Virus record (IMG/VR): IMGVR_UViG_3300027621_000003
Coordinates: 186,001 to 250,000 of that record
Strand: one strand, 5' to 3'
DNA length: 64,000 nt
The translations under genes were made by a program, and so were the position numbers. The first letter of the stretch is position 1, and every line of letters begins with the position of its first letter. Shown piece after piece: positions 17,774-32,069 of the stretch. A model generated the notes under the pieces. That model worked only from the letters and a program-made list of their open reading frames with translations, was not told the DNA's origin and searched no databases.

Positions 17774-18499
17774 TTATTTCCTTTTGTAGTTATGTTTGTG
17801 ACACTCCATCCATTTCTTATATCTTGATTTACCAAGTATATCTAACACCTTATGTAGATACTCTTTTTCACAATCTTTTATTTTACCACACGCAGTCGCT
17901 CTATCCAAACTTGTTTTGATTTTCTCTTTTACCTGATTATTTAAATAGTGCATTTTACTTGCCCATGTTTTTTCTAAAGCGGTAAGTTTTTCTTTGTATT
18001 GAGATTCAGTTATTACACCCATTTTTAAATCATAATCTAATTTTGATTTTTCAGGCATGAACCAATTTAAGTAGTAGTTGTATTTCTGTGTTTTAGCCCA
18101 ACCTTCAATTTCTCTATTAATTCTTGCGACAATTATTTTGTTTTGTTTTTGACATTCAACTTTATTTAAATGAGCCTTATTTAAAAGTTCTTTTTCAGCC
18201 TTTGTAACTTCAATACCTTTTACACAAGAATCAATTTTACCTGTTCTTGATGTAACCATTGTAAATGGGTTGTAATCCAAAAATAATGGATAATCTATTA
18301 TTGTTGCATCAGTTATTGGTGTTATGTCAGATGTCATTGGGTTATCAAAGATAACGGTACCCATAGAATCTACTACAGCGTTTGGTTCTTCATCTACCAA
18401 AAGATTAACTGTTGGGTTTGGAGTTGGTATAGGTTCTTTTTCACAACCCATAAAACCAATCATACCAACTAAAACGAGCGATAATATTATTTTTTTCAT
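17774..18499 (-). CDS. Lipoprotein
   Basis: MKKIILSLVLVGMIGFMG-C signal peptide II followed by EKE. Confidence 0.7.
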   Translation of the reverse strand: MKKIILSLVLVGMIGFMGCEKEPIPTPNPTVNLLVDEEPNAVVDSMGTVIFDNPMTSDITPITDATIIDYPLFLDYNPFTMVTSRTGKIDSCVKGIEVTKAEKELLNKAHLNKVECQKQNKIIVARINREIEGWAKTQKYNYYLNWFMPEKSKLDYDLKMGVITESQYKEKLTALEKTWASKMHYLNNQVKEKIKTSLDRATACGKIKDCEKEYLHKVLDILGKSRYKKWMECHKHNYKRK

Positions 18500-18612
18500 G
18501 TTTTTATTTATAAATAGTTTTTATTTTTTTAAAATTTTTGGAATACGGAATGTTCTCTTACCCATTCTATACTTTTTTGGATTAATGTTAAAAATTGTTT
18601 TAATTTCATTTT

Positions 18613-20502
18613 TTATCTTATTAATGTAAAAGTTCCGTTGTATTGAGTGGATTTATTTTCTTTTGATATTATTTCTATTTTGTAGGTGTATACACTACTT
18701 GGTGACATTTTACCTAAGTAGGTACCGTCCCATCCTGTATTAATATCAACAGTTTCATACAACTTCTCTCCCCACCTGTTGTAAATTTCCATTCTAAAAG
18801 AATAACAATTTGAAATAAAGGGTTGAAAAGTGTTGTTGATAGCCGGGCCTTCTGGATTTGGGGTAAAAACATCGGGTATATACACCTGTAAATCACAAAG
18901 GGAATCTAAAATAGTAAATTTTCTAATAACTGAATCGCATCCGTTTATATTTTGAATAGTATCTTTAAACACCCCTGATATTTTAAATGTTAAATTTTCA
19001 TAAGAAAATTCCTCATCATCACATTTGCTAAATGTTTTATTAATATACTGTACTGTGGATTTGTAAAAATGAATAAATACATAAATGTTTGAGTCACATC
19101 CAGAGGTAGTTTGATTCCACTTGGTGAATTGTGTGTCATTACTGTACTTTTGTCCATCAAAAATAATCGGGTCATTACATGAATATAATTTAACTGTATC
19201 AAAATATGATAATCTATAGAGAGTGTCTATAAAGTAATTTACACACAAATTCTCTGTTTCTGTTTTATAAACAAAAGATTTTTTAGATGGGGGTTCGATG
19301 CTAATGCATTTAACATGTGGATTTAAATAGTAATTCACAGTATCTTTTGTTACTATTGTTAGATACAAAGGGTTTAAGGTGTTATCTAACTTATATGTAC
19401 CATCTTGACTATAGTATTTTTCATTTACATTTATAGAATCCCCTTTACATAAGGTCCTTATCTTAAAAGATATATCTTGAGTTTCTATACAGGTATTGTT
19501 ATTCAAATCAACCCAAAAATCGATGCCTGGATCTGGGTAGAAGTATTTTTGTTGAAATTTTTTATCTGAGGTTATGTAGTAATCGTGAACCTCCCCCGCC
19601 ATAATGTCGATAACATTCGAGTCGATAAACGTAAGATAACTTACAGCCCATGAATTTGGGTCTCTATAACAATATCCATTTTCACATAAATACAAAAAAT
19701 GTAAGCCGTCACATTGTCCTGAAATAGCAACTGCTGGGAAAGGTAAGTTAATCTTTCTCAGGACACGAATTGAATCAACTGAATAATTAAAAGTAAAAAC
19801 ATTTCCATCCTTATCTAGGGCTGATACAAATGCAGTTGTTGCTTTGATATCTACAATAGATTTTAATGCTAATCTGGATATTTTTGGATTTTTAATGAAT
19901 TCACCCCACCCTCCTACATTTATAAAATCAATGTACCCATTAGAATTTAAAGCAAAAAACTTCCCACCCGCTCCCATAGCAACACGTTTTACGTTATTAA
20001 CCCCGGTGATTTGTACAACCTCTTTTATGTAACTTGTGGAATTTGTCGGAGATGTCACCCATAGACTACCATCTTTTTTCACAAAAGCCACCCCGTTTAT
20101 TGCGGCATCACAAAATGATACATTACTTATCACTCCGATAGGGTATTGAATTTCACCCCACACATATCCACTGTCATTTGTTTTAATTATTCCCATAAAG
20201 TATCCACCAGAATGGTATTTTACTTCTGAAAGGTTATATGTCCATGTAGGTGATGTAATCACCGAACGCCAACCCCTTTTTATTAAACCTGTCATACTGT
20301 ATCCCCACCCGTAAAGTTTTCTTTCGGATCCACATATCATAAATCCACCGTAGGAGTACGAACTTAAATTTGTTGGTTTATACCACAAACGCCCTCCGAA
20401 ACCATCACCAACAATACTATTTTGAGACCAACAAACATTTGTAAAAAATATTAAAATATAAGGTATGATATATTTTGTCATAATTTGTTTATTGTTGCTC
20501 AT
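18613..20502 (-). CDS. T9SS type B CTD (gliding-motility-associated C-terminal/CHU_C) surface protein with an RCC1-like N-terminal region
   Basis: Signal peptide; C-terminal YIPDVFTPN...IYNRWGE...WDGTY...VYTY...GTFTLIR; GCDS repeats. Confidence 0.85.
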   Translation of the reverse strand: MSNNKQIMTKYIIPYILIFFTNVCWSQNSIVGDGFGGRLWYKPTNLSSYSYGGFMICGSERKLYGWGYSMTGLIKRGWRSVITSPTWTYNLSEVKYHSGGYFMGIIKTNDSGYVWGEIQYPIGVISNVSFCDAAINGVAFVKKDGSLWVTSPTNSTSYIKEVVQITGVNNVKRVAMGAGGKFFALNSNGYIDFINVGGWGEFIKNPKISRLALKSIVDIKATTAFVSALDKDGNVFTFNYSVDSIRVLRKINLPFPAVAISGQCDGLHFLYLCENGYCYRDPNSWAVSYLTFIDSNVIDIMAGEVHDYYITSDKKFQQKYFYPDPGIDFWVDLNNNTCIETQDISFKIRTLCKGDSINVNEKYYSQDGTYKLDNTLNPLYLTIVTKDTVNYYLNPHVKCISIEPPSKKSFVYKTETENLCVNYFIDTLYRLSYFDTVKLYSCNDPIIFDGQKYSNDTQFTKWNQTTSGCDSNIYVFIHFYKSTVQYINKTFSKCDDEEFSYENLTFKISGVFKDTIQNINGCDSVIRKFTILDSLCDLQVYIPDVFTPNPEGPAINNTFQPFISNCYSFRMEIYNRWGEKLYETVDINTGWDGTYLGKMSPSSVYTYKIEIISKENKSTQYNGTFTLIR

Positions 20503-20761
20503 AGTTTTTAATCTCTCGTTTTACTGCATCCCAATATCTATGCTCTGATTCCAAATTTTGAACTTCCATCCAATCAAAATCAATTGCTTCAATTATTTTA
20601 TTAATTGCAATCATTGCACATTGCTTGGCGTTCCATAATTTCATTCTTTGGGAATAAAATAAACCATCTTCCCTTATTGCTTCATTGGATGTAAATTCAA
20701 TAAATGATTCTATTAATTCCTCGGCTTGTTCTTTCGGTGTCTGTTGTTTATTGTTTGTCAT
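20489..20761 (-). CDS. Cassette-array protein (MTNNKQQTPKEQAEEL)
   Basis: ORF track; starts in a junction repeat. Confidence 0.7.
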   Translation of the reverse strand: MTNNKQQTPKEQAEELIESFIEFTSNEAIREDGLFYSQRMKLWNAKQCAMIAINKIIEAIDFDWMEVQNLESEHRYWDAVKREIKNYEQQ

Positions 20762-21143
20762 CTTCTTTATATTTAATTCCTTTTATTTGATATGATTTTA
20801 GACTTGGTACAAGTATTTCAAAAAATAGATTAGAGTCTATAAAATAACCGTAGCTGTAACCAATTCTTAAACCAACTAACCAAGCATCAAGTTCATAGTG
20901 AAATTGGTGCGGAAATGAGTAATTCTCTTTATCTTGAAGCAGGTGTCCTAATTCATGAAAAAAAATTGCTTTTTGTATTTCCTTATTGTCGCACTTACTT
21001 ATATAAATCTCCGCATTACACAGACTATTTCCACGAGATGAAAACCCAGTGTTATCTTCACCTTTGGCGTTCAAATACAAAGCAATGTTGTTTTGCTTGG
21101 CTATTTGTTCAATAGTGTAAGTTTGTTGTTTATTGTTTGTCAT
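20748..21143 (-). CDS. Cassette-array protein, ImmA/IrrE-like HExxH metallopeptidase
   Basis: IFFHELGHL...ELDAW. Confidence 0.6.
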   Translation of the reverse strand: MTNNKQQTYTIEQIAKQNNIALYLNAKGEDNTGFSSRGNSLCNAEIYISKCDNKEIQKAIFFHELGHLLQDKENYSFPHQFHYELDAWLVGLRIGYSYGYFIDSNLFFEILVPSLKSYQIKGIKYKEDDKQ

Positions 21144-21192
21144 TGCTTAGATTTTGTTTTTAATTGTCCGTACCATTCTGAAAATTTCTTGT

Positions 21193-21363
21193 TCATATTA
21201 TTTTTTTATTGTTTGTCATTGTTTTATCTTTTTCCATAAGTTCTTTAAGTTCTTTTTTTCTTTGTTCTCTTAGTTGTTCTCGGTTTTCAATACGCCATTT
21301 ATTTTTTGCTATTGAATCGGTTTTATACGCAGTAGACAATAAGTGTTTGATTTTGTCATTCAT
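21193..21363 (-). CDS. Cassette-array small protein (MNDKIKHLL)
   Basis: Start corrected; preceded by GGAGGTAACA. Confidence 0.55.
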   Translation of the reverse strand: MNDKIKHLLSTAYKTDSIAKNKWRIENREQLREQRKKELKELMEKDKTMTNNKKII

Positions 21364-21622
21364 TGTTACCTCCGAATGTTTCGTTGTAGTATTGTTGTGA
21401 AAAATCTTCTGCACTTTGTCGTTTTTCAAGATATTCTAAACCATAAGGCAAATTATTAAGATGAATAAACATATCCATTTGAGCATTTTTAATTTCATCC
21501 TTTCGCATTGCTTCGGCTTGTTCAAGTGCTTTGTCAATATCAAATCCTCTCAATCTCAAATTGATGTCTTTTTTGATTTGTTCAACCAACCACTCTACGC
21601 TACTCTGTTTATTGTTGCTCAT
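21356..21622 (-). CDS. Cassette-array protein (MSNNKQSSVEWL...YYNETFGG)
   Basis: Paralog of 22227-22484. Confidence 0.7.
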   Translation of the reverse strand: MSNNKQSSVEWLVEQIKKDINLRLRGFDIDKALEQAEAMRKDEIKNAQMDMFIHLNNLPYGLEYLEKRQSAEDFSQQYYNETFGGNNE

Positions 21623-21855
21623 TTGTTACCTCCTTTCTCCCTTGCAAAAATCTTAAATGTGTTTCCATTGCCATCACTAAATACAATGTTTGAAGTACTA
21701 GTATCACCAATTGTAAGGTTCATTTCTCTTTTTCCATTAATGTATTCAGCAATCATTACTGGTACATCATTATTAAATTGAAATGCCCATTCTAAGTTAT
21801 CAATTTTATGGTTTACAATTGTAACTGTTCCCAAGTTTTGTTTATTGTTGCTCAT
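21619..21855 (-). CDS. Cassette-array protein (MSNNKQNL)
   Basis: Start corrected to the junction ATG. Confidence 0.65.
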   Translation of the reverse strand: MSNNKQNLGTVTIVNHKIDNLEWAFQFNNDVPVMIAEYINGKREMNLTIGDTSTSNIVFSDGNGNTFKIFAREKGGNK

Positions 21856-22096
21856 TGTTACCTCCTTGTATTTTATCACGCATCCAAGTTGCACCACCTA
21901 AATAAGATACATCGTAAGGGTCAAATTCGTCAAACTCCATACCATCCAACTCCATCATTTTTTTAATCTCCTCATCACTTGGTAGTTCAATGGGTGTATA
22001 TTTCATTTCTTCTAATAATTCTTGAGGAGTTACAAAATACTCTCTGTTTAAATTACCGATTATTTGTAACACTTGTTCTTCCGTGTATAGTTTCAT
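21842..22096 (-). CDS. Cassette-array protein (MKLYTEEQV...IELPSDEEI...GATWMRDKIQGG)
   Basis: ORF track. Confidence 0.7.
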   Translation of the reverse strand: MKLYTEEQVLQIIGNLNREYFVTPQELLEEMKYTPIELPSDEEIKKMMELDGMEFDEFDPYDVSYLGGATWMRDKIQGGNNEQQ

Positions 22097-22230
22097 TGCT
22101 CACCTCCTCCGTCTGTTTTGCTTTTTGCATTTTTGCTCATTTTGTTGAATACTTCAACATACATTCTAATTGTTGGAGATACAATATAACTTGCTACTGC
22201 ACCTACCGTAAACCATATTAAATCATTCAT
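22093..22230 (-). CDS. Cassette-array small membrane protein, 45 aa (MNDLIWFTVGAVASY...GGGEQ), absent from the ORF track
   Basis: Hand-translated; ATGA overlaps at both ends. Confidence 0.6.
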   Translation of the reverse strand: MNDLIWFTVGAVASYIVSPTIRMYVEVFNKMSKNAKSKTDGGGEQ

Positions 22231-22484
22231 TGCTTGCCTCCTCCGTAGGTTTCGTTGTAGTATTGTTCAGCTGGTATTATTTCTCTATTAATTACCGAGT
22301 TTCTTCCCTCAATGTAATCATTTATTGTTCTTTCCTTGTCCATTTCTTTGGCTTGTTGATATGCTTTTGTTAGTTCTTCTGCATATTCAATTGGAGAAAG
22401 TTTGCCTAACCTTACTTCGATTTCTAGAATATCTCTTCTAACCGAAAACCATTCCACTGCTGTTTGTTGTTTATTCTTTGTCAT
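22227..22484 (-). CDS. Cassette-array protein (MTKNKQQTAVEWF...AEQYYNETYGG)
   Basis: ORF track. Confidence 0.7.
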   Translation of the reverse strand: MTKNKQQTAVEWFSVRRDILEIEVRLGKLSPIEYAEELTKAYQQAKEMDKERTINDYIEGRNSVINREIIPAEQYYNETYGGGKQ

Positions 22485-22572
22485 AACTTTTATTTTTTAA
22501 ATATTTTTCTATGTCGTTAATATACGAACAATCTTTCATAAAGCCAAATTTATTTTGAATAATTTTTTTTCT

Positions 22573-25500
22573 TTACCTTAGTAATGTAAAAGTTCCGTTG
22601 TATTGAAATACTTTATCTTCAAGTGACGTTACTATCATTTTATATACATATACACCATCTGGTGCAGGTTGTCCTTTATAATTACCATCCCATCCTTTTG
22701 TAAGGTCGGTTGTTTCATACATTTTTTCACCCCAACGATTAAAGATTAACATTTCATATGTTTTGTTATTAATAACATACGGTCTGAATGTATTGTTTTC
22801 ATTTGGTCCAGCACCATCAGGTGTAAATGCGTCAGGTACAAAGATAATGATATCAGGACCAATAACAACCTTTTTCATTGAAGAATCTTTACATCCTTTA
22901 TCTGTGGTAACAATTAACTTAATCCAATATGTCCCTGTATCCTTTCCAAATACAATGTTTGAGTTCTTAAGTGTATCACTACCAATCTTATATGATTTAC
23001 CCCAAGTCCAATTGTGTTTCATGTTGGTGACAAATGGATTCTGACTAACACTTGATGTGTTAATAGTTTTGAACTTAGGTAATGCCACCGTTGTTTTGTA
23101 CAATGGGTCGGTATTAAACACAACACTTGGTTTTGGATAAACATTAACGGTTTGTGTTATTGTTCTATTACATTGTTTTTTACCTTCTACGTTTGTAATT
23201 GATAAAGTTATTTGGTATTGTCCTTGTGTTGAGAACAAGTAAGGAACTGAACTGTTATTAGTGGAGATACTATTAGTATTTACATACCAATTATATGTTA
23301 ACAAAGAAGGGTTAATTCCTTTTCTTTCGGTGGGTGTAAAAGTGGTATTCAGTGGTTCACATCCATTTTGATATGTAAACATTGGGTCGGGATATTGGTG
23401 AATATAAACTCTTACGGTATCAAAAGGGTTTGGACATACATTTTTTGCAACACTCCAATCAACTCTAACATCAACATAACCTAACGCAGTATCAGTAATT
23501 GTTGGGACATACTTTTTATTCATGGTTGGTCCAAATGTTGCCATTGGTGTCCAATTAAATGTTCCACCATTTAAGTATTGGGTATCAATTTTTAATGTAA
23601 CTGTGTCAAACTCACATACTTCAATTGGTTTAACAAATTTAACTTTTGGTATATTAACAATTGTGATTTTAGCGTATTCAGTATCTTGACAGTTATATGG
23701 TGTAAGACCAATCATCATCCATTTGTATGGACCTGGTACATAACCTGTTAGAGTTGTTGTTCCGTTGAAGAATCTACCATCAGGATAACTCACAATGGTT
23801 CCACCTTTATTACTTACAGCTAATGTTAACACATCCAAAGGAATTGCGGATGCACATATTGTAGTATCTCTAACTCTCAAGTCCGATGTATCATGAACTA
23901 TGATATTAAAACTATCTATTTTTACACAACCAAATTGTGAACTTACATATTTTATGTTATACACACCAGGTCCTGTAGATGTTTTGAATAATCCTGTAGA
24001 AATGTTTGTAGTTACTTTTGGATGACTCCTATCACCATTTACATCTTGAACGTAAATTGTTCCTCCTGTTGGTTTAACACCATTAACGGTTATGTAGTCA
24101 AACATATTAACATTAATACCTGAGTTCACACAATAATCAGGAATTGTTTTAATAATAACTGTTGGTTCTGCAATTATATTTACGTCAACAGTATCGGTAC
24201 TTTGACATCCTGTAACTAAATCTCTAACAATAAGTTTGAATGTGTATTTTCCTTGATATTCATCTTGAAACGATAAACCAAAGTTAAATTTGATGTTTGG
24301 TGTTACACCACCTGAAATGTCATACAATAATTTTGATGTATCAATTCCTGATGGAGCTCTTACCACATCCCATCTCATATAAACACCTGATTTGGTTGCT
24401 GGTTTAGTTCTTAACACGTCCATCATCATTGACCCAATATCCTGACAAATAGTTTTTGGAACTAATGTAATCATTGGTGTACCATAAATTGTTTGTGTTG
24501 TTGAATCCATGTTGGAACAACTATTTGTGTCTGTGAACTTCACATACATTTTGGTGGTATAATTGTTTCCACCTTGTAATTTACTATTGTCAAGTAAAGT
24601 TGTGTTGAACAAAAATCTTCCATTATAAGGAATATATCCGTAAGTTATATTACCTGATTTTTTTAACTTATCTCCATTCCAAACATCATACGTTCCAAGA
24701 TTATGAGGTTTAACTAAGAATAGTTCCGACCATATACTACCATAAGAATAACATTGAGGTTTTAGTGGTTTTGGACTCCAACTAATTTTTGGTAATGGTT
24801 TAACCCTCACAAACATTGTATCCATATCTTCACAAGAACGTCCATTTTGAGTTAGAACAGTCTTTAATGTAAACATATAGGTTAATTTTGTTATATCAGA
24901 TTTTAGCTTATAGGTTGATAAATTACCCAATCCGCCCCAAGTATATGTAGGACTTAATAGTGGTGGTCTATGACTGGCAGTCAAGGTGAATGTGTCTTTA
25001 TCGCATATTGCTTGGTTTAGTCCTGCATTTGTTATTACAGTATCGTTTACAAAAACTGTTGCGGTATCATATTTTACACACTTCCACTTTGTTTCCATTA
25101 CCTGTACCCAATAGATGCCTTTTAAATTGGTTTTAAATATTCGTGTTGTATCACCAGTGCTCCACATATATTTAACCGTGTCTGAATTTTGAGCATCAAA
25201 TGTAGCAATTTCATAAGTACATATTTGTTGGTCAATTCCAATTCCCACCACTGGTAATGGTTTCTTATAAATTGTAGTTGTATCATAGAAAATACATCCA
25301 TCCCCATCAGTAATTTTTAGACGAACTGTAGAGTCACGATTAATATTAGGAATACTTAAAGTTTGAAAAGTATCTCCTAAAATATGCTCTTCAGATTTCC
25401 AAGCCGCTTTAGACCCTGTATCTTTCACTACTCTGGTCCAATAGTATTTGAATGGTGAATTACCAAACAATATGTTAGCATTTAACTTCATTGTAGTACC

Positions 25501-27114
25501 AAAACACGCAAAAGTGTCAGCATCAGCCATAACAACCTGAGGTGGATTTGGAATAATAACAGTATCCCTATATATGGTAGGACAGTTATCTGAGTTGTTT
25601 ACAGTATGTACAATAATGTATTTTCCACCACGGTAAAATGTCATAGTATCTGATTTTTTTGTACTATAAAATATCTCAGACTTGCCCAAGCTATCTCTTA
25701 CACTCCACTTAAATTGAGGAGCACCTTTAAAGGATAAACTAACAGATGCCGCCATGGCGAATTTACCACATTTTAAATTTGTGTATTTGCGAATACTAAA
25801 TGCTCGTGGATTTACTTTAACCTTAAAACCACGAATGGCTTGAGAAGGTTTTGGACAGTGTTCATCTGTTACTGTTACCGTGAAAGCATAAGAAATATCT
25901 GACGCCATACCCACAGAAGGTGTCCATTCAAAATAAGCCCATGCTTTTCTTTTTTCGGGCCAATCCTTCCTATTTGCCAAGGTAAACTTAGCGCCAGGAA
26001 TACCTTTATTCCATTTTAAATTTGTTGTATCTGGAATTGTTTGATTCGGAGTAAATGTTTCATCATCCGATTCTACCTTGAATTTTAGTGTTTCACCTTC
26101 ACAGACTTTCCAATTAAACGGACCTAACAATGTTGGTGCTTTGTTGTAACCACAATCATCTTTCACCCACAATTGCATATCTCTACGTGTTTTACCAACA
26201 ATGATATAACTGCCTGTGGCACTGTCTTTTCGCCATTCTGTAATTACAATCACCGCAATTGCAACTTCATCACATTTCGTGGGTGTTAAGATAATATCAC
26301 CAGAACTTGTATCAAAGAATAATCCTCTTGGAGGGTTCAGTCCGGGTTTAGGAGCACAGTTAATTGAAGTTGGTGGAATGCAATATGGCGTCATGAAATA
26401 ACGAGGAGTAAATGGCGAAGAATAAGATACAGAATTGTTGGGCAAAGTGTTAATACCATTTGTTAAACTGTATGAAAAAGAATCATAATCAACAGTATCA
26501 ATTGCACCATTATTAAAATAATATGCCTGATTACAACAAAGAAAGGCGATGGGAGCATTACTTAGTGTTGGAGAAGAGTTACACTTGTTTGTAGTCTTCT
26601 TTATATTACAGATGTTAATCATACAGGTAGTATAAAAACCTTGACTGGCGGGTCCAGTAGTAATGGCACCATTTCTACAACACTGTCCAATGTAAAATGT
26701 CACTTCACAACATGTAGATTTATTGAGATAACCACTTAATGGACTTGTATTAAAATCTACCGTAACTTCATAGGTATGTTCTTCAATTCCCTCACCAGTA
26801 CCATAAGTATTTTGAGGAGAACAAGGCGAACTCGCTGTTGAACATCGTGGCGTAACGTCTTTAATTCCCGTTCTGGTAATAGATAAAAGACTACTTCCGC
26901 ATCCATTTCCACCATTGGTTCCTGCAAATACACCAAATTCAGGAGAATTGAATGGGACACCTCTACAATCTCTATAAATTTTTGCTGTGATTTTATATTT
27001 TCCGTTACCCAAACATTTATAAGACATATCTCCACCCATCATGTGAGTGGATGTGGAAATGTTTGATAACAAAAACGTTAGAATAAAAAGTAATAATGGT
27101 AAAAGTTTTTTCAT
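22573..27114 (-). CDS. Large T9SS type B CTD surface protein with Ig/PKD-like repeats
   Basis: Signal peptide MKKLLPLLLF; THMMGGDMSYKCLG N-terminus; C-terminal FVPDAFTP...IFNRWGE...WDGNY...GVYVY...GTFTLLR. Confidence 0.9.
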   Translation of the reverse strand: MKKLLPLLLFILTFLLSNISTSTHMMGGDMSYKCLGNGKYKITAKIYRDCRGVPFNSPEFGVFAGTNGGNGCGSSLLSITRTGIKDVTPRCSTASSPCSPQNTYGTGEGIEEHTYEVTVDFNTSPLSGYLNKSTCCEVTFYIGQCCRNGAITTGPASQGFYTTCMINICNIKKTTNKCNSSPTLSNAPIAFLCCNQAYYFNNGAIDTVDYDSFSYSLTNGINTLPNNSVSYSSPFTPRYFMTPYCIPPTSINCAPKPGLNPPRGLFFDTSSGDIILTPTKCDEVAIAVIVITEWRKDSATGSYIIVGKTRRDMQLWVKDDCGYNKAPTLLGPFNWKVCEGETLKFKVESDDETFTPNQTIPDTTNLKWNKGIPGAKFTLANRKDWPEKRKAWAYFEWTPSVGMASDISYAFTVTVTDEHCPKPSQAIRGFKVKVNPRAFSIRKYTNLKCGKFAMAASVSLSFKGAPQFKWSVRDSLGKSEIFYSTKKSDTMTFYRGGKYIIVHTVNNSDNCPTIYRDTVIIPNPPQVVMADADTFACFGTTMKLNANILFGNSPFKYYWTRVVKDTGSKAAWKSEEHILGDTFQTLSIPNINRDSTVRLKITDGDGCIFYDTTTIYKKPLPVVGIGIDQQICTYEIATFDAQNSDTVKYMWSTGDTTRIFKTNLKGIYWVQVMETKWKCVKYDTATVFVNDTVITNAGLNQAICDKDTFTLTASHRPPLLSPTYTWGGLGNLSTYKLKSDITKLTYMFTLKTVLTQNGRSCEDMDTMFVRVKPLPKISWSPKPLKPQCYSYGSIWSELFLVKPHNLGTYDVWNGDKLKKSGNITYGYIPYNGRFLFNTTLLDNSKLQGGNNYTTKMYVKFTDTNSCSNMDSTTQTIYGTPMITLVPKTICQDIGSMMMDVLRTKPATKSGVYMRWDVVRAPSGIDTSKLLYDISGGVTPNIKFNFGLSFQDEYQGKYTFKLIVRDLVTGCQSTDTVDVNIIAEPTVIIKTIPDYCVNSGINVNMFDYITVNGVKPTGGTIYVQDVNGDRSHPKVTTNISTGLFKTSTGPGVYNIKYVSSQFGCVKIDSFNIIVHDTSDLRVRDTTICASAIPLDVLTLAVSNKGGTIVSYPDGRFFNGTTTLTGYVPGPYKWMMIGLTPYNCQDTEYAKITIVNIPKVKFVKPIEVCEFDTVTLKIDTQYLNGGTFNWTPMATFGPTMNKKYVPTITDTALGYVDVRVDWSVAKNVCPNPFDTVRVYIHQYPDPMFTYQNGCEPLNTTFTPTERKGINPSLLTYNWYVNTNSISTNNSSVPYLFSTQGQYQITLSITNVEGKKQCNRTITQTVNVYPKPSVVFNTDPLYKTTVALPKFKTINTSSVSQNPFVTNMKHNWTWGKSYKIGSDTLKNSNIVFGKDTGTYWIKLIVTTDKGCKDSSMKKVVIGPDIIIFVPDAFTPDGAGPNENNTFRPYVINNKTYEMLIFNRWGEKMYETTDLTKGWDGNYKGQPAPDGVYVYKMIVTSLEDKVFQYNGTFTLLR

Positions 27115-27172
27115 CTCTATAAGTATAGACAATATTAATGATAAAAAGTATTCTTGCTGTAAAAAAATAAAA

Positions 27173-27196
27173 AACCCCCAACTTTCGCTGAGGGTT
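27173..27196 (-). terminator. Repeated terminator hairpin, copy 1 of 3
   Basis: aacccccaactttcgctgagggtt, also at 30271-30295 and 32150-32174. Confidence 0.7.
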
Positions 27197-27221
27197 CTAT
27201 TATTACTGAGTAGTATTCTTC

Positions 27222-27506: not shown

Positions 27507-27530
27507 ATTAATATAAATACTTTAAAAGTA

Positions 27531-27558
27531 AAAAAGGTCAGACGAATCTGACCTTTTA
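27531..27558. terminator. Intrinsic terminator
   Basis: aaaggtcaga-cgaa-tctgaccttt hairpin. Confidence 0.65.
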
Positions 27559-27580
27559 TTGGGATTGACCGAATTCTCGG

Positions 27581-27892
27581 TCAATCAGCTCCACCACCCT
27601 CTTTTTTAGGAGAAGGGACTCCTGTAAAGATATTTAAAATATCTTCCACTTCTTCACCTGAACGGTAACTCATAACATCTGCACCACCACAGAACAGTTT
27701 TGTTACGAAATTACCACTACCGTTTTCTATTATAGCAATTTCAAATGTAGTTTCAAAATCACCATAAAGACCTTGTTTACCACCAACAATTGACACAACA
27801 TATTTACCAAAATCAAACAAACTTTGATAACCACCAAATTCTTTTAGTTTTTTCCTATCTTGTACGTCTTGTATGGTTAATTTAGTTTTCAC
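27581..27892 (-). CDS. Hypothetical phage protein
   Basis: SIVGG..GLYGD..TTFEIAI motif. Confidence 0.65.
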   Translation of the reverse strand: MKTKLTIQDVQDRKKLKEFGGYQSLFDFGKYVVSIVGGKQGLYGDFETTFEIAIIENGSGNFVTKLFCGGADVMSYRSGEEVEDILNIFTGVPSPKKEGGGAD

Positions 27893-28202
27893 GTAATTGT
27901 CTTAGTTTAATCCTTAGTAAATCTAAATTGTCTTTATCTCTTTGCGTCTTATTTCGTTTTGATACCAACTCATCAATTAAATCTTCAACCATCATAGTTT
28001 CACGTTCAAGGGTTAATTCTTTTTGAGTTTTTGCTGGTTCTATATTGGGTTGTTTTTCTTCAAGTTCCCTTTCTATTCTTTTTTTCTCATTCATATTGTG
28101 AATTGTTTTGACAACAATTGCACCTAAAACAACTCCACCAACAAATGGCCAAAATCCACCACGTTTCTGTTCTTTAACAACAACTATTCTTTCGTATCCC
28201 AT
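27882..28202 (-). CDS. Single-TM hypothetical protein
   Basis: TM segment FWPFVGGVVLGAIVV. Confidence 0.65.
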   Translation of the reverse strand: MGYERIVVVKEQKRGGFWPFVGGVVLGAIVVKTIHNMNEKKRIERELEEKQPNIEPAKTQKELTLERETMMVEDLIDELVSKRNKTQRDKDNLDLLRIKLRQLREN

Positions 28203-28203
28203 A

Positions 28204-28476
28204 TTATTTAGTAATTAATGCTTCAATTTTAGACTTAACCAACTCGGTCATAGATACCTCAGTTACATTGGTCATAATAACTGAATCTTTCAAGATACGA
28301 AAAGGGATGTGACTCAAGAAGTCTTCACCGTTGAAGAAGTCAAAGTCTGACTTATGAGCAAGACAACCATCCATTAAACGAAGGAACAACTTGAATTGTT
28401 CACCACTTGAAAATGTCTCACTTAATAATACACCCATTGACTCGTGTACAATCTTGATGTTAAATCCCTTATTCAT
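28204..28476 (-). CDS. Hypothetical protein
   Basis: Start corrected (TATCTTTG at 28481-28488). Confidence 0.65.
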   Translation of the reverse strand: MNKGFNIKIVHESMGVLLSETFSSGEQFKLFLRLMDGCLAHKSDFDFFNGEDFLSHIPFRILKDSVIMTNVTEVSMTELVKSKIEALITK

Positions 28477-28513
28477 AATACAAAGATACAATTAGTTTTT
28501 GAATTACCAAACT

Positions 28514-29539
28514 TTATTTTTCAGATAACAAGAATTTATTTGATATTGCTTTGAAAGAAATTGTGTTATCCAAAGAACGAACCACAACACCTTCACGTTC
28601 TGCAAGTTTGTTTAAACGAGATTTGTCTTCAGCCAATTTTACCATCCCTTCAACCGTTTCAGGTAATAAGAATGCTACATCTAAAATTGGTACAGATAAT
28701 AATTCTAACTCATCCAATAAGATTAAGAAGTCATTAATGGTCATTCTTGTTTGTGTATCAATATCAAACCCATTGAAGAAATGAACTGTTTGTCCTTTGA
28801 TTTTGTATGGGTTACCTTGGATACCTTCACCAATCAACTCACCTTGTAAACAAATGTTTCCTTTGATTTTGAATTTGTTTTCCAAGTCAAGTTCACGGGC
28901 AACTTTCCAAAAAGTATTTCCTTCAGTTTCAAGTAATTCCAAATTACGAGAACATACACCAAACTCACCCTCATTCATATAAAATGTTGCAGATGAACCA
29001 TCCAACTTTTCAGTCATGTAAAACTGATGCTCAGATGTTAGTTTATATTCTTCATACTCCTTAACCAAGTTCTGAACCCTTTCTTCATCTGTCTTACGTA
29101 AGAAAGATGGGAACCCACCTTTTACTTTACCAGATAGTTCGGCAGGAATTGGTGGTTCGTATTTCACAATACCCAACATTTCAGTTACATCCAAACCTTC
29201 AGGTAAATCGTGTCCTGTTGCAAATTGTGTGATTGGAACAACACTGATTGGAAGAATAAGTCCTTGAGATAATTGACCACGAAGTCTAATTGTCTTCAAT
29301 CTGAAACCTTCTTGGTCACCCATTTTCTTGTAAGATGATTTACGTAAAAACTCAAACTCTTCCTTGATAGGTAAGAATGAATCAATCTCACAATACACCA
29401 CACTGTTTCCCACTTTATGTTCAACATCTTTGGCCACAACAACATTCCAACCACCTACAATGGCTATTTCAATTTTGTCTGCACCTTCAATAGGTCGGAT
29501 GTCAGTAATTTTTCTAATAGTTGCTAATTTTCTTTCCAT
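28514..29539 (-). CDS. RNA ligase, DRB0094/Rnl2-like family
   Basis: RKLATIRKI..I.PIEGADKIE N-terminal domain; KTDEERVQN; EKLDGSS; GELIG; EGVV; FKAIS. Confidence 0.9.
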   Translation of the reverse strand: MERKLATIRKITDIRPIEGADKIEIAIVGGWNVVVAKDVEHKVGNSVVYCEIDSFLPIKEEFEFLRKSSYKKMGDQEGFRLKTIRLRGQLSQGLILPISVVPITQFATGHDLPEGLDVTEMLGIVKYEPPIPAELSGKVKGGFPSFLRKTDEERVQNLVKEYEEYKLTSEHQFYMTEKLDGSSATFYMNEGEFGVCSRNLELLETEGNTFWKVARELDLENKFKIKGNICLQGELIGEGIQGNPYKIKGQTVHFFNGFDIDTQTRMTINDFLILLDELELLSVPILDVAFLLPETVEGMVKLAEDKSRLNKLAEREGVVVRSLDNTISFKAISNKFLLSEK

Positions 29540-29543
29540 ATTT

Positions 29544-29726
29544 TTAATCTTTTCCAAAAGTATAACCAATCATAAATCCGTGTATCCAATATGTCTTTTC
29601 ATTGTCATCACCTTGATTATCCATCTCATCCCAAGTTTGTTCCGCCAATTTTTGAACTTTGAACTTTGTGTCCTTTCTTTCTTCTACGGCTTCGGGACTC
29701 AAATCAACTAACGGTTTATTTTTCAT
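29544..29726 (-). CDS. Small hypothetical protein
   Basis: Start corrected (TATCTTTG at 29731-29738). Confidence 0.55.
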   Translation of the reverse strand: MKNKPLVDLSPEAVEERKDTKFKVQKLAEQTWDEMDNQGDDNEKTYWIHGFMIGYTFGKD

Positions 29727-29774
29727 GAAACAAAGATACAAAAAATATTTCTAATTGACAAGGTATTTATTGAT

Positions 29775-30269
29775 ATGATTGGTATCACACCTAAAGAAAA
29801 AATGTTAGTTAGTGTTTTGGTAAAAATATATTCCAAAGAACAACTTGAGGAGGAACTAAATGATATTTTAGAAACTATTGACAGTTCAAAGTTAGTTCGT
29901 GGAGCCGCAAAGTTAATCGGTATTAATGCAAATGAAATTAGTAGAATTGGATTACAATATCTTAATTATGCCGTTGATAATTACGAAAAAATTAAAAACA
30001 AAGAATATCCTGAAGATATTGAAAGGGTACAACAAGTTTATTTTTATGCTGATGAAAGTGAAAATGTAGTAATGTTTAGTAGAAAAAGAGTTAGTATTAA
30101 TACTTTACCAAAATATATAGACCAAGTTGAGGACCATGTATATAATAATTTTTATGAATACGACCCAGATACTTTAGATGTTGATTACGGTGATGGTGAC
30201 CTTATAAGTTTTGAACCTGACAAAGAAATGATAACCATATTGGATATTTCTAATAACGTGTTAAATTAA
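29775..30269 (+). CDS. Hypothetical protein
   Basis: TATTTAT at 29764-29770. Confidence 0.7.
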   Translation: MIGITPKEKMLVSVLVKIYSKEQLEEELNDILETIDSSKLVRGAAKLIGINANEISRIGLQYLNYAVDNYEKIKNKEYPEDIERVQQVYFYADESENVVMFSRKRVSINTLPKYIDQVEDHVYNNFYEYDPDTLDVDYGDGDLISFEPDKEMITILDISNNVLN

Positions 30270-30270
30270 A

Positions 30271-30295
30271 AACCCCCAACTTTCGCTGAGGGTTT
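30271..30295 (-). terminator. Repeated terminator hairpin, copy 2 of 3
   Basis: See 27173-27196. Confidence 0.7.
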
Positions 30296-30317
30296 CATTA
30301 TCAAAGTTTTATTAAGT

Positions 30318-32069
30318 TTATTTAGTTACCACAACTTGGTAAACAATATTGTTATTACCACCTTGTATGTGGAAGAAATACAATCCACTATTCAAATCTG
30401 ATAAGTTTACATTTACAAAGTTATTGCCTGAAATAACACTCATTGTTGTCATTTTTCTAACCATTCTGCCGTTTAAATCCGTCACGAATACATCAGCGTT
30501 GAATGATTGTGTTGATGTGAATTCAACTGTATATTCACCGTTTGTTGGGTTAGGATAAGCACTTACTGATTTAACTTTACCAACTACTTTAACTTGAGTT
30601 ACACCATAAAAACCTAAAACACCATATTCAAAGTTTGGTAGTATGTTTAAATCTGCTGGTCTAAAATCAGGTGCTGTAAAGTTATTTGTATTAACTAAGA
30701 AACCTGGTTTGAAAGTATTTGTATCAATTGTATTATTGTTTATTGAATTACGAATCCAACTATCCAATACGGTTACATTACTACCTGAACTAACCTCAGC
30801 CAAACCTGTATTGGTTGTTCCGACAGGTGCGGATGCTTTAACACCATAGATGTAGTTGTTTCTAAACAAATTATTTTTGTCTGAAATTGTTTTTGATTTA
30901 ACACCTGAGTTAACCAATACTGAATCACCATCAAACATCACAAAGTTTCTATAACCCATAAAGATTGAGTTAACAATACTCAAACGAGAGTTTCTACGAA
31001 TTCTTATTCCACGTCTGAACGCTCCTTTTTGTGTTATTGATAATTGAGACCAAGTCATACCTGCAGGTATTGGACCAACACAAGTCATGTTTGAAAATAC
31101 TGCTGTTGTTAAAGGTAATCTTCCCGAACCTGATGCGTCATTGTCCGACTCAAATGTTTCTGAAGTTGATGCTCCTGATGATGAGTTCCAAGACAAATCA
31201 TAGTAAGATGAATCTTTAAAAGAAATACCGAACTGAACTGCTCCACGATATCCAAAGTCAGTATCAAAATCGTCATCAGTTGTTTTGAATGAAATCAAAT
31301 GTTTACAATTAACTGTTCCACCAAACCATTCATATGAATCATCACCTGAGAATGATACCTGTACATTATTGATAGTTGTGTTTCTTCCAACAGAACAAAA
31401 TGTTAATCCGTTGATTTCTTTGTTTGGTTCAAATGCAACACCACCAAATTCAATTCTTAAATTATTAATTGAACCGCTGTTGTCATCATCATTGATTCCA
31501 CCGTGTTTTGCTAATGTGTTATCCAAAGCCACGTTATTGAAACCTTCCATTTGAATGTCAGTTCCCTGATTGTTAATTGCTTTACCACACAACACTAATC
31601 CACCCCAATCCCCTCTGTCACGAGAACCAATTGGTTTTGCTGATGTTAAAACAACTGGATTAGTTACCGTTCCATCAATCTGAATGTAACCACCTCTTTC
31701 AACAACAATTGTTGCGTATTGTTTTGGTGATGATTGTGAGTTTGATTGTCCACGAATAATTGTACCAGCAGGGATAATTAATTTACCACCGTTTCTAACC
31801 ACAACCAAACTACGTAACAAATAAACCTTTGATGGGTCCAATGTAATAGTTGCTGTGATGTTAACTTCACCTGTTGGATTAGTCAAAGTGTTTGTATCAC
31901 TTACAGTTCCATAGGTTGTATTTTTAGGGTCCCATTGGGTCCAACTCTTTGTCCAATCTTTTGATGAGTTTGATTCAAGAGCTCCGATGTGATTTACTTT
32001 CTCAAAGAATTGAGCGTTTGCCGTTAAACACATAACAGCCGATAATAGAATGAATACTATTTTTTTCAT
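30318..32069 (-). CDS. T9SS type A CTD (Por secretion tail) secreted beta-helix-like protein
   Basis: Signal peptide ending ANA-Q; GDWGGLVLCG, EINGLT and DDSYEWFGGTVN; C-terminal YPNP...DLNGR...LNSGLYF. Confidence 0.85.
   Translation of the reverse strand: MKKIVFILLSAVMCLTANAQFFEKVNHIGALESNSSKDWTKSWTQWDPKNTTYGTVSDTNTLTNPTGEVNITATITLDPSKVYLLRSLVVVRNGGKLIIPAGTIIRGQSNSQSSPKQYATIVVERGGYIQIDGTVTNPVVLTSAKPIGSRDRGDWGGLVLCGKAINNQGTDIQMEGFNNVALDNTLAKHGGINDDDNSGSINNLRIEFGGVAFEPNKEINGLTFCSVGRNTTINNVQVSFSGDDSYEWFGGTVNCKHLISFKTTDDDFDTDFGYRGAVQFGISFKDSSYYDLSWNSSSGASTSETFESDNDASGSGRLPLTTAVFSNMTCVGPIPAGMTWSQLSITQKGAFRRGIRIRRNSRLSIVNSIFMGYRNFVMFDGDSVLVNSGVKSKTISDKNNLFRNNYIYGVKASAPVGTTNTGLAEVSSGSNVTVLDSWIRNSINNNTIDTNTFKPGFLVNTNNFTAPDFRPADLNILPNFEYGVLGFYGVTQVKVVGKVKSVSAYPNPTNGEYTVEFTSTQSFNADVFVTDLNGRMVRKMTTMSVISGNNFVNVNLSDLNSGLYFFHIQGGNNNIVYQVVVTK

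What the first reader, a model, noticed from the sequence alone, without database searches (positions are those of the whole stretch)
17774..32069. Phage encodes three type IX secretion cargo proteins and a lipoprotein: remodelling of the host surface
Seen: two type B CTD proteins (629 aa and ~1513 aa) whose 3' ends share an identical 25-nt stretch (taatgtaaaagttccgttgtattga; QYNGTFTL(L/I)R), one type A CTD protein (583 aa) and a lipoprotein, all with intact signal peptides. Known: type A/B CTDs direct export through the Bacteroidota T9SS, and type B cargo normally needs a PorP/SprF partner, none of which is visible here. Inference: the infected cell displays phage-encoded adhesin-like or scavenging proteins (receptor masking, grazing defence, aggregation, nutrient capture), which implies a long-lived infected state.
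Basis: partly seen in the sequence, partly recalled or inferred. Interest (0 to 1): 0.78.

Follow-up and report, generated by a model that had tools for sequence, protein, structure and literature searches.

The report
Jumbo phage carries host-secretion surface proteins
A roughly 295-kb freshwater phage of Bacteroidota carries three host-derived genes for proteins exported by the host's type IX secretion system, plus a lipoprotein gene. The genes are intact and kept under purifying selection, so the phage probably alters the infected cell's surface; this general idea has already been reported for another phage.

Summary
Three minus-strand genes encode a Sec signal peptide plus a T9SS C-terminal domain (CTD) scoring above curated cut-offs: two type B (629 aa, 1513 aa) and one type A (583 aa). 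A 241-aa lipoprotein gene and the shared 25-nt stretch are also real.

The region is not misassembled host DNA. The same gene order was assembled independently in many samples, on contigs up to 295 kb that IMG/VR lists as viral. The best cellular homologues are only 44-58% identical.

New findings:
- In cells, the 583-aa beta-helix protein is the conserved downstream partner of a TonB-dependent receptor. The phage has the partner only.
- Phage copies form one clade, occur in non-syntenic phage genomes, and have dN/dS of 0.07-0.3.
- The adhesin passenger region diverges fast, while its CTD and the adjacent lipoprotein stay conserved.
- No PorP/SprF gene is present in the window, but cellular homologues are also "orphan" type B cargo, so this is not an anomaly.

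Phage-encoded type A T9SS cargo was described in 2019-2020. Type B cargo and a transporter partner in a phage are new variants of that. Function is inferred, and the "long-lived infection" inference has no support.

The parts
17742..17769 (-). Intrinsic terminator-like hairpin and T-run directly after the lipoprotein gene. It is the likely end of the transcription unit.
   Evidence: 12-pair stem, 4 G-C pairs, followed by a T-run
17774..18499 (-). 241-aa lipoprotein. It has a signal peptide with lipobox Cys19, a Pro-rich linker and a long three-helix bundle, with conserved Cys92, Cys116, Cys210 and Cys233. It lies directly downstream of a type B CTD gene in this phage and in its relatives.
   Evidence: alignment, invariant Cys19; AF2 pLDDT 80.8, >90 for residues 100-230; only 21 representative homologues in 1.84 billion; adjacency in L119-L122; no fold match
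18613..20502 (-). Type B T9SS cargo of 629 aa (probable start at 20481, M8). It has a signal peptide, an RCC1-like beta-propeller, a Cys-rich middle region and a type B CTD.
   Evidence: TIGR04131 50.6 bits; homologues carry PF25390/PF00415 plus CHU_C; conserved signal peptide...SQNSIVGDGFGGR
18622..18646 (+). First copy of the 25-nt identical stretch, at the 3' end of the 629-aa gene (QYNGTFTL).
20480..22510 (-). Block of eight small ORFs (84-131 aa) between the two type B genes. Their starts share a ~20-nt box (M(S/T)NNKQ). This block and the 629-aa gene are both absent from the sister genome.
   Evidence: repeat families D1-D4; joints between the boxes in other strains
22573..27114 (-). Type B T9SS cargo of 1513 aa. 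It has a signal peptide, a conserved THMMGGDMSYKCLG N-terminal module, PKD/Ig-like repeats (adhesin-like) and a type B CTD.
   Evidence: TIGR04131 42.1 bits, PKD_4 55.5 bits; full-length homologues from 94% down to 34% identity
22582..22606 (+). Second copy of the 25-nt identical stretch, at the 3' end of the 1513-aa gene.
27161..27198 (-). Copy of the 32-nt hairpin terminator (AACCCTCAKCGAAAGTTGGGGGTTTTT), directly upstream of the 1513-aa gene.
30260..30296 (-). Copy of the same hairpin terminator, directly downstream of the 583-aa gene, between convergent genes.
30318..32069 (-). Type A T9SS cargo of 583 aa. It has a signal peptide (…ANA|QFF), a pectate-lyase-like beta-helix (PF28492) and a type A CTD. 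It is a phage copy of the surface partner of a TonB-dependent receptor.
   Evidence: TIGR04183 44 bits; PF28492; receptor synteny in cells; phage clade; beta-helix modelled with confidence for residues 50-270
32139..32174 (-). Copy of the same hairpin terminator, about 70 nt upstream of the 583-aa gene start. With the downstream copy, it insulates the 583-aa gene on both sides, a moron-like layout.

Best explanation
The window is part of the accessory region of a ~295-kb freshwater jumbo phage that infects a T9SS-bearing Bacteroidota host. The sister cellular sequences come from Flavobacteriales/Bacteroidia-type MAGs.

The phage carries host-derived genes for three T9SS substrates and one lipoprotein.

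Shown:
- The genes are intact and have a Sec signal peptide and a CTD above curated cut-offs.
- They are under purifying selection and are shared by several non-syntenic phage genomes.
- They are bracketed by terminators.
- They are present in lake metatranscriptomes.

Inferred:
- During infection the proteins cross the inner membrane by host Sec and the outer membrane by the host T9SS.
- The 583-aa beta-helix protein (type A CTD) takes the general PorV route. It joins, or substitutes for, the host's own partner of a TonB-dependent receptor. This adds substrate-capture capacity, probably for a glycan. The logic is the same as cyanophage pstS, where the phage supplies only the capture subunit.
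- The two type B proteins are orphan cargo. They must borrow a host PorP/SprF-type shuttle. In F. johnsoniae these shuttles are scarce and used stoichiometrically. The phage proteins would therefore both add phage-specified adhesin-like proteins and displace host type B adhesins on the surface.
- The fast-diverging passenger region with a conserved CTD fits a surface-conflict role, such as receptor replacement or superinfection exclusion.
- The lipoprotein, always directly downstream of a type B gene, is a candidate accessory of that cargo.

The confidence given (0.6) is for export through the host T9SS with display or release at the cell surface. The specific roles (transporter partner, shuttle competition, lipoprotein accessory) are each less certain.
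For: CTDs above curated cut-offs at the extreme C-terminus. All type B motifs are present in the alignment with cellular CTDs.

Signal peptides and mature N-termini are conserved between phage and cellular homologues.

Viral setting:
- The identical 583-aa protein occurs in 49 collection blocks with the same gene order, on contigs up to 295,095 bp.
- IMG/VR holds UViGs of 294,914 and 232,874 bp.
- Neighbouring genes are T4-type Rnl1, an Rnl2-like ligase, a kinase, DNA methyltransferases, T5orf172, SbcCD-like proteins, a sigma factor and an amidase.

Host origin: full-length cellular homologues have the same architecture at 57-58% (583-aa), 44-47% (1513-aa) and about 30-35% identity (629-aa).

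Receptor partnership:
- An orthologous same-strand TonB-dependent receptor ends less than 600 bp upstream in 42 of 59 cellular loci with enough flank, and within about 900 bp in about 10 more.
- It is the only conserved neighbour.
- No such receptor is found in the window or in the other phage loci.

Retention in phages:
- All sequences more than 60% identical form one clade (100/99 support), sister to the receptor-linked cellular clade. This includes the three with known phage context.
- Those contexts are non-syntenic.
- dN/dS is 0.07-0.22 (583-aa), 0.13-0.22 (adhesin) and 0.21-0.30 (lipoprotein).

Against the sister genome, enzymes are 90-93% identical, while the adhesin is 62%, the lipoprotein 66% and the beta-helix protein 77%. 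CTDs are more conserved than passenger regions.

Shuttle logic comes from PMC12618676. The phage CTDs are 49-53% identical to each other and 45-60% identical to cellular homologues' CTDs. That lies within the range where shuttle sharing was shown.

Terminators flank the genes. Contigs in four metatranscriptomes cover the lipoprotein gene, the 629-aa gene and the small ORFs. Depth is very uneven (0 to 69 within 2 kb in X2), which argues against plain DNA carry-over.
Against: - No experiment shows secretion. The host is unknown, so the presence of a T9SS and of a matching shuttle in the host is assumed.
- No virion structural gene was seen in the ~90 kb inspected. The viral assignment therefore rests on IMG/VR listing and on gene content.
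- The substrate of the receptor/beta-helix pair is unknown. No riboswitch was found in 10 loci. The AF2 model of the C-terminal half is poor (pLDDT below 50) and Foldseek found no PDB match.
- RNA-library contigs do not prove transcription, and the 3' part of the adhesin gene is barely covered.
- The lipoprotein is absent from one relative (L124). Its cellular homologue is not next to a type B gene.
Confidence: 0.6

Rival explanations
1. Superinfection exclusion or receptor masking is the main purpose of all four proteins. The phage uses host surface structures as its receptor: type B adhesins and the TonB-dependent receptor. It then covers or replaces them, as the T5 Llp lipoprotein blocks FhuA. 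This stops later phages, and it stops progeny being lost on cell debris.
For: - The adhesin passenger region is the most divergent large gene between sister genomes, while its CTD is conserved.
- Type B shuttles are limiting, so phage cargo would displace host cargo (PMC12618676).
- The beta-helix protein is a physical partner of an outer-membrane receptor in cells.
- A lipoprotein is co-encoded.
- Bellas et al. proposed the same role for variable T9SS cargo.
- From my own knowledge, not tested here: T9SS and gliding mutants of Flavobacterium are phage resistant.
Against: - The phage receptor is unknown.
- dN/dS is well below 1 for all genes, so there is no gene-wide signal of positive selection.
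- The 583-aa protein keeps the family's invariant residues, as expected if it keeps its native activity.
Confidence: 0.25
2. The 583-aa beta-helix protein is a secreted polysaccharide depolymerase. It degrades the host capsule or extracellular polysaccharide during infection to free progeny. It is not a transporter partner.
For: PF28492 is a pectate-lyase-like beta-helix. Beta-helices are the usual fold of phage depolymerases (my own knowledge). The N-terminal half is confidently modelled as a beta-helix.
Against: - It is not virion-associated, because it has a Sec signal and a T9SS CTD.
- Its cellular orthologues are tied to a TonB-dependent receptor in about 52 of 59 loci, not to capsule loci.
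- No structural match to a known lyase or hydrolase was found.
Confidence: 0.1
3. The CTD-like domains are Ig-like decoration domains of virion proteins, and the proteins are structural rather than secreted.
For: Type A CTDs are Ig-like beta-sandwiches. In crAss-like contigs, T9SS-sorting-domain ORFs lie near head genes (PMC6949934). In another phage the adhesin homologue lies near Gp23-like and Mtd_N genes.
Against: - All three have N-terminal Sec signal peptides conserved with cellular cargo.
- Homology to cellular T9SS substrates runs the full length.
- Virions assemble in the cytoplasm.
- There are no structural genes nearby in this window.
Confidence: 0.03
4. The region is host DNA, either misassembled or from a genomic island or plasmid. 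The genes are then ordinary cellular T9SS cargo.
For: No capsid, terminase or tail gene was found in the inspected ~90 kb. Some MAG bins contain related contigs.
Against: - The same order was assembled independently in at least 24 contigs from JGI, ENA and Logan samples.
- G+C content is even and a single strand dominates across 64 kb.
- Flanks on both sides are phage-type genes.
- IMG/VR lists the genome twice, at nearly the same length as the JGI contig.
- No cellular genome holds anything closer than 58%.
Confidence: 0.04

Closest known systems
'Cryophage' T9SS type A cargo genes (Bellas et al. 2020, Nat Commun, PMC7468147)
   Same: A phage of a Bacteroidota host encodes proteins with T9SS sorting domains. 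The cargo genes are among the most variable genes between phage variants. The proposed roles are extra enzymatic capacity, or competition and superinfection exclusion.
   Different: That report covered type A CTDs only (an endoglucanase, a GH39 and a PA14 protein) and called it a unique occurrence. Here there are two type B CTD proteins, which use a different, shuttle-limited route. There is also a transporter-partner beta-helix protein and a linked lipoprotein. The genes were traced across several phage lineages with a phage-specific clade.
[quoted passage not shown]
   Same: Type B CTD proteins with no adjacent porP/sprF-like gene. They are predicted adhesins, and the CTD identity between cargoes (49-53% here) is in the range at which a shuttle is shared.
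   Different: These are encoded by a virus, so the shuttle must be the host's. No secretion data exist.
Cyanophage pstS and similar auxiliary genes for nutrient capture (my own knowledge, not tested here)
   Same: The phage carries only the substrate-capture subunit of a host uptake system and relies on the host for the transporter itself. Here that is the beta-helix partner without the TonB-dependent receptor.
   Different: The compartment and machinery differ: an outer-membrane surface protein delivered by the T9SS rather than a periplasmic binding protein of an ABC transporter. The substrate is unknown.
Phage T5 Llp lipoprotein blocking FhuA (my own knowledge, not tested here)
   Same: A phage-encoded outer-membrane lipoprotein or surface protein aimed at a TonB-dependent receptor, as a model for receptor masking.
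   Different: There is no sequence or fold similarity. Here the receptor link is through the beta-helix protein's cellular synteny. No demonstrated receptor role supports it.
PeSL mobile regulatory cassettes of T4-type phages (my own knowledge, not tested here)
   Same: Repeated stem-loop elements bracket accessory ORFs in a hyperplastic region, and gene order is shuffled between relatives.
   Different: Only the hairpin and T-run are repeated. A shared promoter could not be shown: TTAATATTGT occurs 3 times against 1.1 expected, which is not significant. The element is absent from the other phage lineages that carry these cargo genes.

Membership tests
T9SS type A CTD substrate (583-aa protein) | C-terminal TIGR04183 / PF18962 domain at the extreme C-terminus, above the curated cut-off | tested here: met
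   TIGR04183 44 bits (cut-off 23), residues 505-581 of 583. PF18962 50 bits (cut-off 27).
T9SS type A CTD substrate (583-aa protein) | N-terminal Sec (SPI) signal peptide | tested here: met
   MKKIVFILLSAVMCLTANA|QFF. The signal peptide and Gln at +1 are conserved across phage and cellular homologues. Judged by inspection; no predictor was available.
T9SS type A CTD substrate (583-aa protein) | Export depends on the T9SS (PorV shuttle, CTD removal by PorU) | not testable with these tools
   Needs expression in wild-type versus T9SS-mutant cells.
T9SS type B CTD substrate (629-aa and 1513-aa proteins) | C-terminal TIGR04131 / PF13585 domain above the curated cut-off, with the conserved motifs | tested here: met
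   50.6 and 42.1 bits (cut-off 35); CHU_C 43 and 46 bits (cut-off 27). The motifs IPDxFTPN, NRWGEK, GWDG, GVYxY and GTxTLxR align with cellular CTDs.
T9SS type B CTD substrate (629-aa and 1513-aa proteins) | N-terminal Sec signal peptide | tested here: met
   MTKYIIPYILIFFTNVCWS|QNS and MKKLLPLLLFILTFLLSNISTS|THMMG. Both match the signal peptides of homologues. Judged by inspection.
T9SS type B CTD substrate (629-aa and 1513-aa proteins) | Cognate porP/sprF-like shuttle gene directly downstream (common, but not universal) | tested here: not met
   - No PF11751 match in any window ORF long enough.
- None downstream of type B genes in 10 other viral loci.
- Cellular homologues also lack one within 7-8 kb.
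This places them in the 'orphan' subclass (PMC12618676). The rest of the genome was not inspected.
Bacterial lipoprotein (241-aa protein) | SPII signal peptide with a lipobox Cys | tested here: met
   MKKIILSLVLVGMIGFMG|C. Cys19 is invariant in 11 family members. The weak NCBIfam lipoprotein hit covers the N-terminus only and is below cut-off.
Bacterial lipoprotein (241-aa protein) | Bacteroidota surface-export signal (acidic residues just after the Cys) | tested here: inconclusive
   The sequences after the Cys are CEKE or CKKE. These are only partly like the consensus as I recall it.
Tailed jumbo phage | Virion hallmark genes (major capsid, terminase, portal, tail) | tested here: inconclusive
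   None were found in the window or in about 17 kb of flanks. About 205 kb of the genome could not be fetched.

Indirect support:
- IMG/VR lists UViGs of 294,914 and 232,874 bp.
- The Rnl1 homologue matches 1572 phage records.
- SbcCD-like proteins, a sigma factor and an amidase are present.
Phage moron / auxiliary gene | Host-derived gene, dispensable for replication, with its own transcription signals, variably present among relatives | tested here: met
   - Cellular homologues exist.
- Terminators flank the genes.
- The 629-aa gene block is absent from the sister genome, and the lipoprotein gene is absent from L124.
Promoters were not demonstrated.
Beta_helix_4 (PF28492) partner of a TonB-dependent receptor | PF28492 domain, with the gene immediately downstream of a TonB-dependent receptor gene | tested here: not met
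   The domain is present and the family's invariant residues are kept. The phage gene has no receptor gene beside it. In cells the synteny holds in 42 of 59 loci, plus about 10 more. It is a homologue by descent that has been detached from the operon.

The most novel reading that the evidence does not exclude
Phages of Bacteroidota exploit the scarcity of type B shuttles. By flooding the host's orphan PorP/SprF-type shuttle with their own fast-evolving adhesins, they strip the host's own type B adhesins from the surface and replace them. Those host adhesins are likely phage receptors and gliding proteins. The conserved helical lipoprotein encoded directly downstream would help in this, as a phage-specific accessory that takes the genomic place of porP/sprF. 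Together this would be a T9SS-based superinfection-exclusion and motility-shutdown system. In parallel, the detached beta-helix partner would re-tune a host TonB-dependent transporter.
Probability: 0.15. Interest if true: 0.85.

Novelty: new variant of a known kind. Interest (0 to 1): 0.6.

Why it matters
The T9SS builds the outer surface of Bacteroidota, including adhesins, gliding machinery and nutrient-capturing enzymes. The same surface is what phages and grazers see.

Three things would follow from showing that large environmental phages keep their own cargo for both T9SS routes under purifying selection across several lineages:
- It would extend the auxiliary-gene concept from metabolism to host surface architecture.
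- It would give a natural test of how orphan type B signals find a shuttle.
- It would point to a widespread but uncharacterised receptor/beta-helix uptake pair in freshwater Bacteroidota, important enough for phages to copy.

The system can be tested in the harmless model organism F. johnsoniae.

Tried and rejected
Searches that found nothing useful:
- Megablast of the region against GenBank phages found no match. There are no tRNAs in the window.
- PHROGs and Pfam scans for virion genes in the window and flanks found none.
- Using a Gp23-like protein from another phage (L018) to find a capsid gene in IMG/VR found no relatives. One look-up of a window-end protein failed, probably because of a start-codon mismatch.
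- An Rfam scan of 10 cellular receptor/beta-helix loci, run to guess the substrate, gave no hits.

Structure attempts:
- The profile search of the 583-aa family against PDB sequences matched only the CTD.
- The AF2 model of the 583-aa protein is good only for residues 50-270, and Foldseek against PDB matched only Ig-like domains to the CTD.
- The AF2 model of the lipoprotein is confident but is a generic helical bundle with no significant match.

Ideas considered and not retained:
- Lipoprotein homologue contexts were short contigs and uninformative.
- A cobalamin link was considered. A PduO-type adenosyltransferase gene lies between the receptor and beta-helix genes in 15 loci, and MetH occurs in one phage. 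I rejected it as a conclusion: there is no cobalamin riboswitch, the receptor is not BtuB-like, and the synteny is confined to one lineage.
- A shared promoter motif, TTAATATTGT, is not significant. The T4 late-promoter motif TATAAATA is not enriched.
- The idea that the 629-aa CTD is a recent recombinant of the adhesin CTD is not supported beyond the last 25 nt.

Full report
**Observation**

- The 629-aa ORF (18613-20502) scores 50.6 bits on TIGR04131 (curated cut-off 35) and 43 bits on Pfam CHU_C.
- The large ORF (22573-27132) scores 42.1 bits on TIGR04131 and 46 bits on CHU_C, and has a PKD domain.
- The 583-aa ORF (30318-32069) scores 44 bits on TIGR04183 (cut-off 23) and 50 bits on Por_Secre_tail.

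All three CTDs end at the last residue of the protein. The quoted 25-nt string occurs exactly twice, at 18622-18646 and 22582-22606, against none expected by chance.

The N-termini are canonical signal peptides and are conserved with homologues. The adhesin most likely starts at the ATG at 27114 (1513 aa). Public gene calls start at M31 and so lose the signal peptide. The 629-aa protein probably starts at its eighth codon. The 241-aa ORF (17774-18499) has a lipobox cysteine that is invariant in its family.

**Is it a phage, and is it misassembled?**

The identical 583-aa protein is recorded in 49 blocks of the assembly collection. All 24 contigs read show the same neighbours. The longest is a 295,095-bp JGI contig, on which the window maps to about 185-249 kb.

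IMG/VR lists the same genome as UViGs of 294,914 and 232,874 bp. G+C content is even at 0.28-0.38, and nearly all genes share one strand.

The neighbours are typical of large phages:
- a T4 gp63-type RNA ligase whose homologues occur in 1572 GenBank phage records;
- a second RNA ligase, a kinase, several DNA methyltransferases and T5orf172;
- just beyond the window, SbcCD-like proteins, a sigma factor and an amidase.

No virion gene was seen in the ~90 kb I could inspect. The viral assignment is therefore strong but indirect. No cellular genome holds anything closer than 58% identity. Misassembled host DNA is therefore excluded.

**The 583-aa protein**

It combines a pectate-lyase-like beta-helix (PF28492) with a type A CTD. 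It belongs to a large family in freshwater Bacteroidota; 298 loci were confirmed in species-representative genomes.

In those genomes an orthologous TonB-dependent receptor lies on the same strand. It has a CarboxypepD_reg domain and a Plug domain, and is TIGR01782-like. It ends less than 600 bp upstream in 42 of 59 loci with enough flank. It lies within about 900 bp in about 10 more. It is the only conserved neighbour.

The phage has the partner but not the receptor. A maximum-likelihood tree puts the window protein, two other copies with proven phage context and every metagenomic protein above 60% identity in one clade (100/99 support). That clade is sister to a receptor-linked cellular clade.

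The phage contexts share no other genes:
- The 89%-identical copy sits among cohesin-CTD, GH19, GDSL, MetH and AdoHcyase genes.
- The 62%-identical copy sits beside gp32, UvsX, DnaB and RNR genes.

Between phage copies dN/dS is 0.07-0.22, and the family's invariant residues are kept. The gene was therefore captured once from a host lineage. It has since been kept, under selection, in different phages. The substrate is unknown.

**The two type B proteins**

The 1513-aa protein is an adhesin-like chain of PKD/Ig-type repeats behind a conserved N-terminal module. Full-length homologues run from 94% down to 34% identity. Chromosomal ones, at 44-47%, are annotated as gliding-motility-associated CTD proteins. 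A 61%-identical copy lies in a T4-like phage contig with Gp23, ClpP, ThyA and Mtd_N genes and two further type A cargo genes.

The 629-aa protein is an RCC1-like propeller with a Cys-rich region. Its cellular homologues are about 30-35% identical.

The cellular homologues of both families have no porP/sprF gene within 7-8 kb. None occurs in the window. None lies downstream of type B genes in ten other viral loci.

Recent work in F. johnsoniae bears on this (PMC12618676):
- Such orphan type B substrates share one unlinked shuttle.
- Shuttle sharing occurs at CTD identities of about 44-68%.
- Shuttles are scarce and used stoichiometrically.

The two phage CTDs are 49-53% identical to each other. 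They are 45-60% identical to the CTDs of cellular homologues, and CTDs are consistently more conserved than passenger regions. The absent partner is thus expected. It implies that the phage cargo must borrow, and would compete for, a host shuttle.

**Evolution of the island**

In the closest sister genome (IMG/VR 3300047476_001337) gene order is collinear. The enzymes are 90-93% identical. The adhesin is 62%, the lipoprotein 66% and the beta-helix protein 77% identical.

In that genome, and in a second group of relatives, the lipoprotein gene directly follows the adhesin gene. In the second group it is 96% identical, next to an adhesin that is 63% identical overall but has a 92%-identical CTD.

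In the window, a block of eight small paralogous ORFs plus the 629-aa gene lies between the adhesin and the lipoprotein. The small ORFs share a ~20-nt start box. Metatranscriptome contigs join these boxes in other orders. One contig joins the sequence downstream of the adhesin gene to a 629-type CTD end. Cassettes are therefore being shuffled among strains.

A 32-nt hairpin terminator occurs only three times in 64 kb, against 0.04 expected. The copies lie upstream and downstream of the 583-aa gene and upstream of the adhesin gene. A separate terminator follows the lipoprotein gene.

The shared 25 nt encode the terminal motif common to type B CTDs. Synonymous sites differ elsewhere in the CTDs. 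The identity may therefore reflect local gene conversion, but I could not show more than that.

**Expression**

Four lake metatranscriptome runs hold contigs on the lipoprotein gene, including one error-free contig spanning it. They also hold contigs on the 629-aa gene and the small ORFs. Depth in one run ranges from 0 to 69 within 2 kb, which is unlike DNA carry-over. The 3' part of the adhesin gene is barely covered. These are assembler contigs from RNA libraries and do not prove transcription.

**How it most likely works**

Shown: intact, selected, host-derived cargo genes for both T9SS routes lie in a viral accessory region. One of them is a detached partner of an outer-membrane transporter.

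Inferred: host Sec and the host T9SS export the proteins.
- The beta-helix protein adds capture capacity to a host TonB-dependent receptor, following the logic of cyanophage pstS.
- The type B proteins occupy a limiting host shuttle and re-dress the surface with phage-specified adhesins.
- The lipoprotein may assist them.

A pure receptor-masking or superinfection-exclusion role is the main rival, and sequence alone cannot exclude it. Nothing in the sequence speaks to a long-lived infected state.

**Comparison and novelty**

Phage-encoded T9SS cargo has been reported before:
- type A cargo (an endoglucanase, a GH39 and a PA14 protein) in 'Cryophage', where it was called a unique occurrence and noted as hypervariable (PMC7468147);
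- T9SS sorting-domain ORFs in crAss-like contigs (PMC6949934).

My searches found no report of type B cargo in phages. Type B CTD genes are nevertheless in at least 23 IMG/VR loci. They also occur in two 634-642-kb uncultured phage genomes in GenBank, but in no cultured phage.

I rate this a new variant of a known kind. It is of solid interest to specialists in phage-Bacteroidota biology and is testable in F. johnsoniae. It is not a new principle.

Noticed in passing
window 20480-22510: Eight small minus-strand ORFs (84-131 aa) form a paralogous family. They share a ~20-nt start box (ATGAGCAACAATAAACAAA, M(S/T)NNKQ), and some share a C-terminal YNETxGG motif. The same box sits at the annotated start of the 629-aa gene. 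RNA-library contigs from other samples join these boxes in different orders, so copy number and order vary between strains.
   Followed up: partly
window 32139-32174, 30260-30296, 27161-27198: A 32-nt hairpin terminator (AACCCTCAKCGAAAGTTGGGGGTTTTT) occurs three times in 64 kb (0.04 expected), only around the cargo genes. It is absent from the other phage lineages that carry homologous cargo. It may mark a cassette boundary.
   Followed up: partly
window 12719-15669: A full-length phosphoenolpyruvate synthase (800 aa, 1136 bits on the NCBIfam equivalog) overlaps the end of a dTDP-4-dehydrorhamnose 3,5-epimerase gene (RmlC). The PEP synthase has no match in the sister genome, where a shorter segment occupies its place.
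   Followed up: partly
window 28514-29569, 33623-34678 and the adjacent AAA_33 gene: Two RNA ligases (an Rnl2-like ligase with a PHA02142 OB-fold, and a T4 gp63/Rnl1-like ligase) plus a polynucleotide-kinase-like protein. This looks like a T4-style RNA-repair set, presumably against host anticodon nucleases.
   Followed up: no
window 8803-9348, 43543-44100, 44184-45215, 56601-57545, 54167-55543: Further host-like genes: a NuoB-like protein (Oxidored_q6), a guanylate kinase, a glutamine-synthetase-like protein, a full DnaJ and a leucine-rich-repeat protein. There are also at least four DNA methyltransferases (35275-36072, 42671-43543, 55570-56409 and others by PHROGs).
   Followed up: no
L044, L046, L049, L053, L068, L074 and others (cellular loci): In 15 cellular loci of one Flavobacteriales lineage, a PduO-type cob(I)alamin adenosyltransferase gene lies on the opposite strand between the TonB-dependent receptor gene and the beta-helix gene. 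One phage with the beta-helix gene (L101) also encodes B12-dependent methionine synthase and AdoHcy hydrolase. No cobalamin riboswitch was found, so a corrinoid link remains only a lead.
   Followed up: partly
L018 2401-5534 and 14693-23208; L014 12214-17746; L101 2105-4000: The T4-like phage lineage that shares the adhesin and beta-helix genes carries additional type A cargo (a cohesin + Por_Secre_tail protein of ~630 aa and a 282-aa Por_Secre_tail protein). It also has C-type lectin/Laminin_G proteins, and Mtd_N (tropism-determinant-like) genes near the adhesin.
   Followed up: no
L033, L037, L057 (titled Rhizobium), L024, L093 (Bifidobacterium), L053 (Sphingomonadales): Species-representative MAGs titled as Rhizobium, Bifidobacterium or Sphingomonadales hold typical Bacteroidota receptor + T9SS-cargo contigs. 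These are most likely binning contamination or mislabelled records.
   Followed up: no
GenBank LR745206.1 (634,780 bp) and LR756502.1 (642,428 bp): Two of the largest uncultured phage genomes in GenBank carry several type B CTD-like ORFs (4 and 2-3 places). LR745206.1 also has a relative of the beta-helix domain. The records are unannotated.
   Followed up: no
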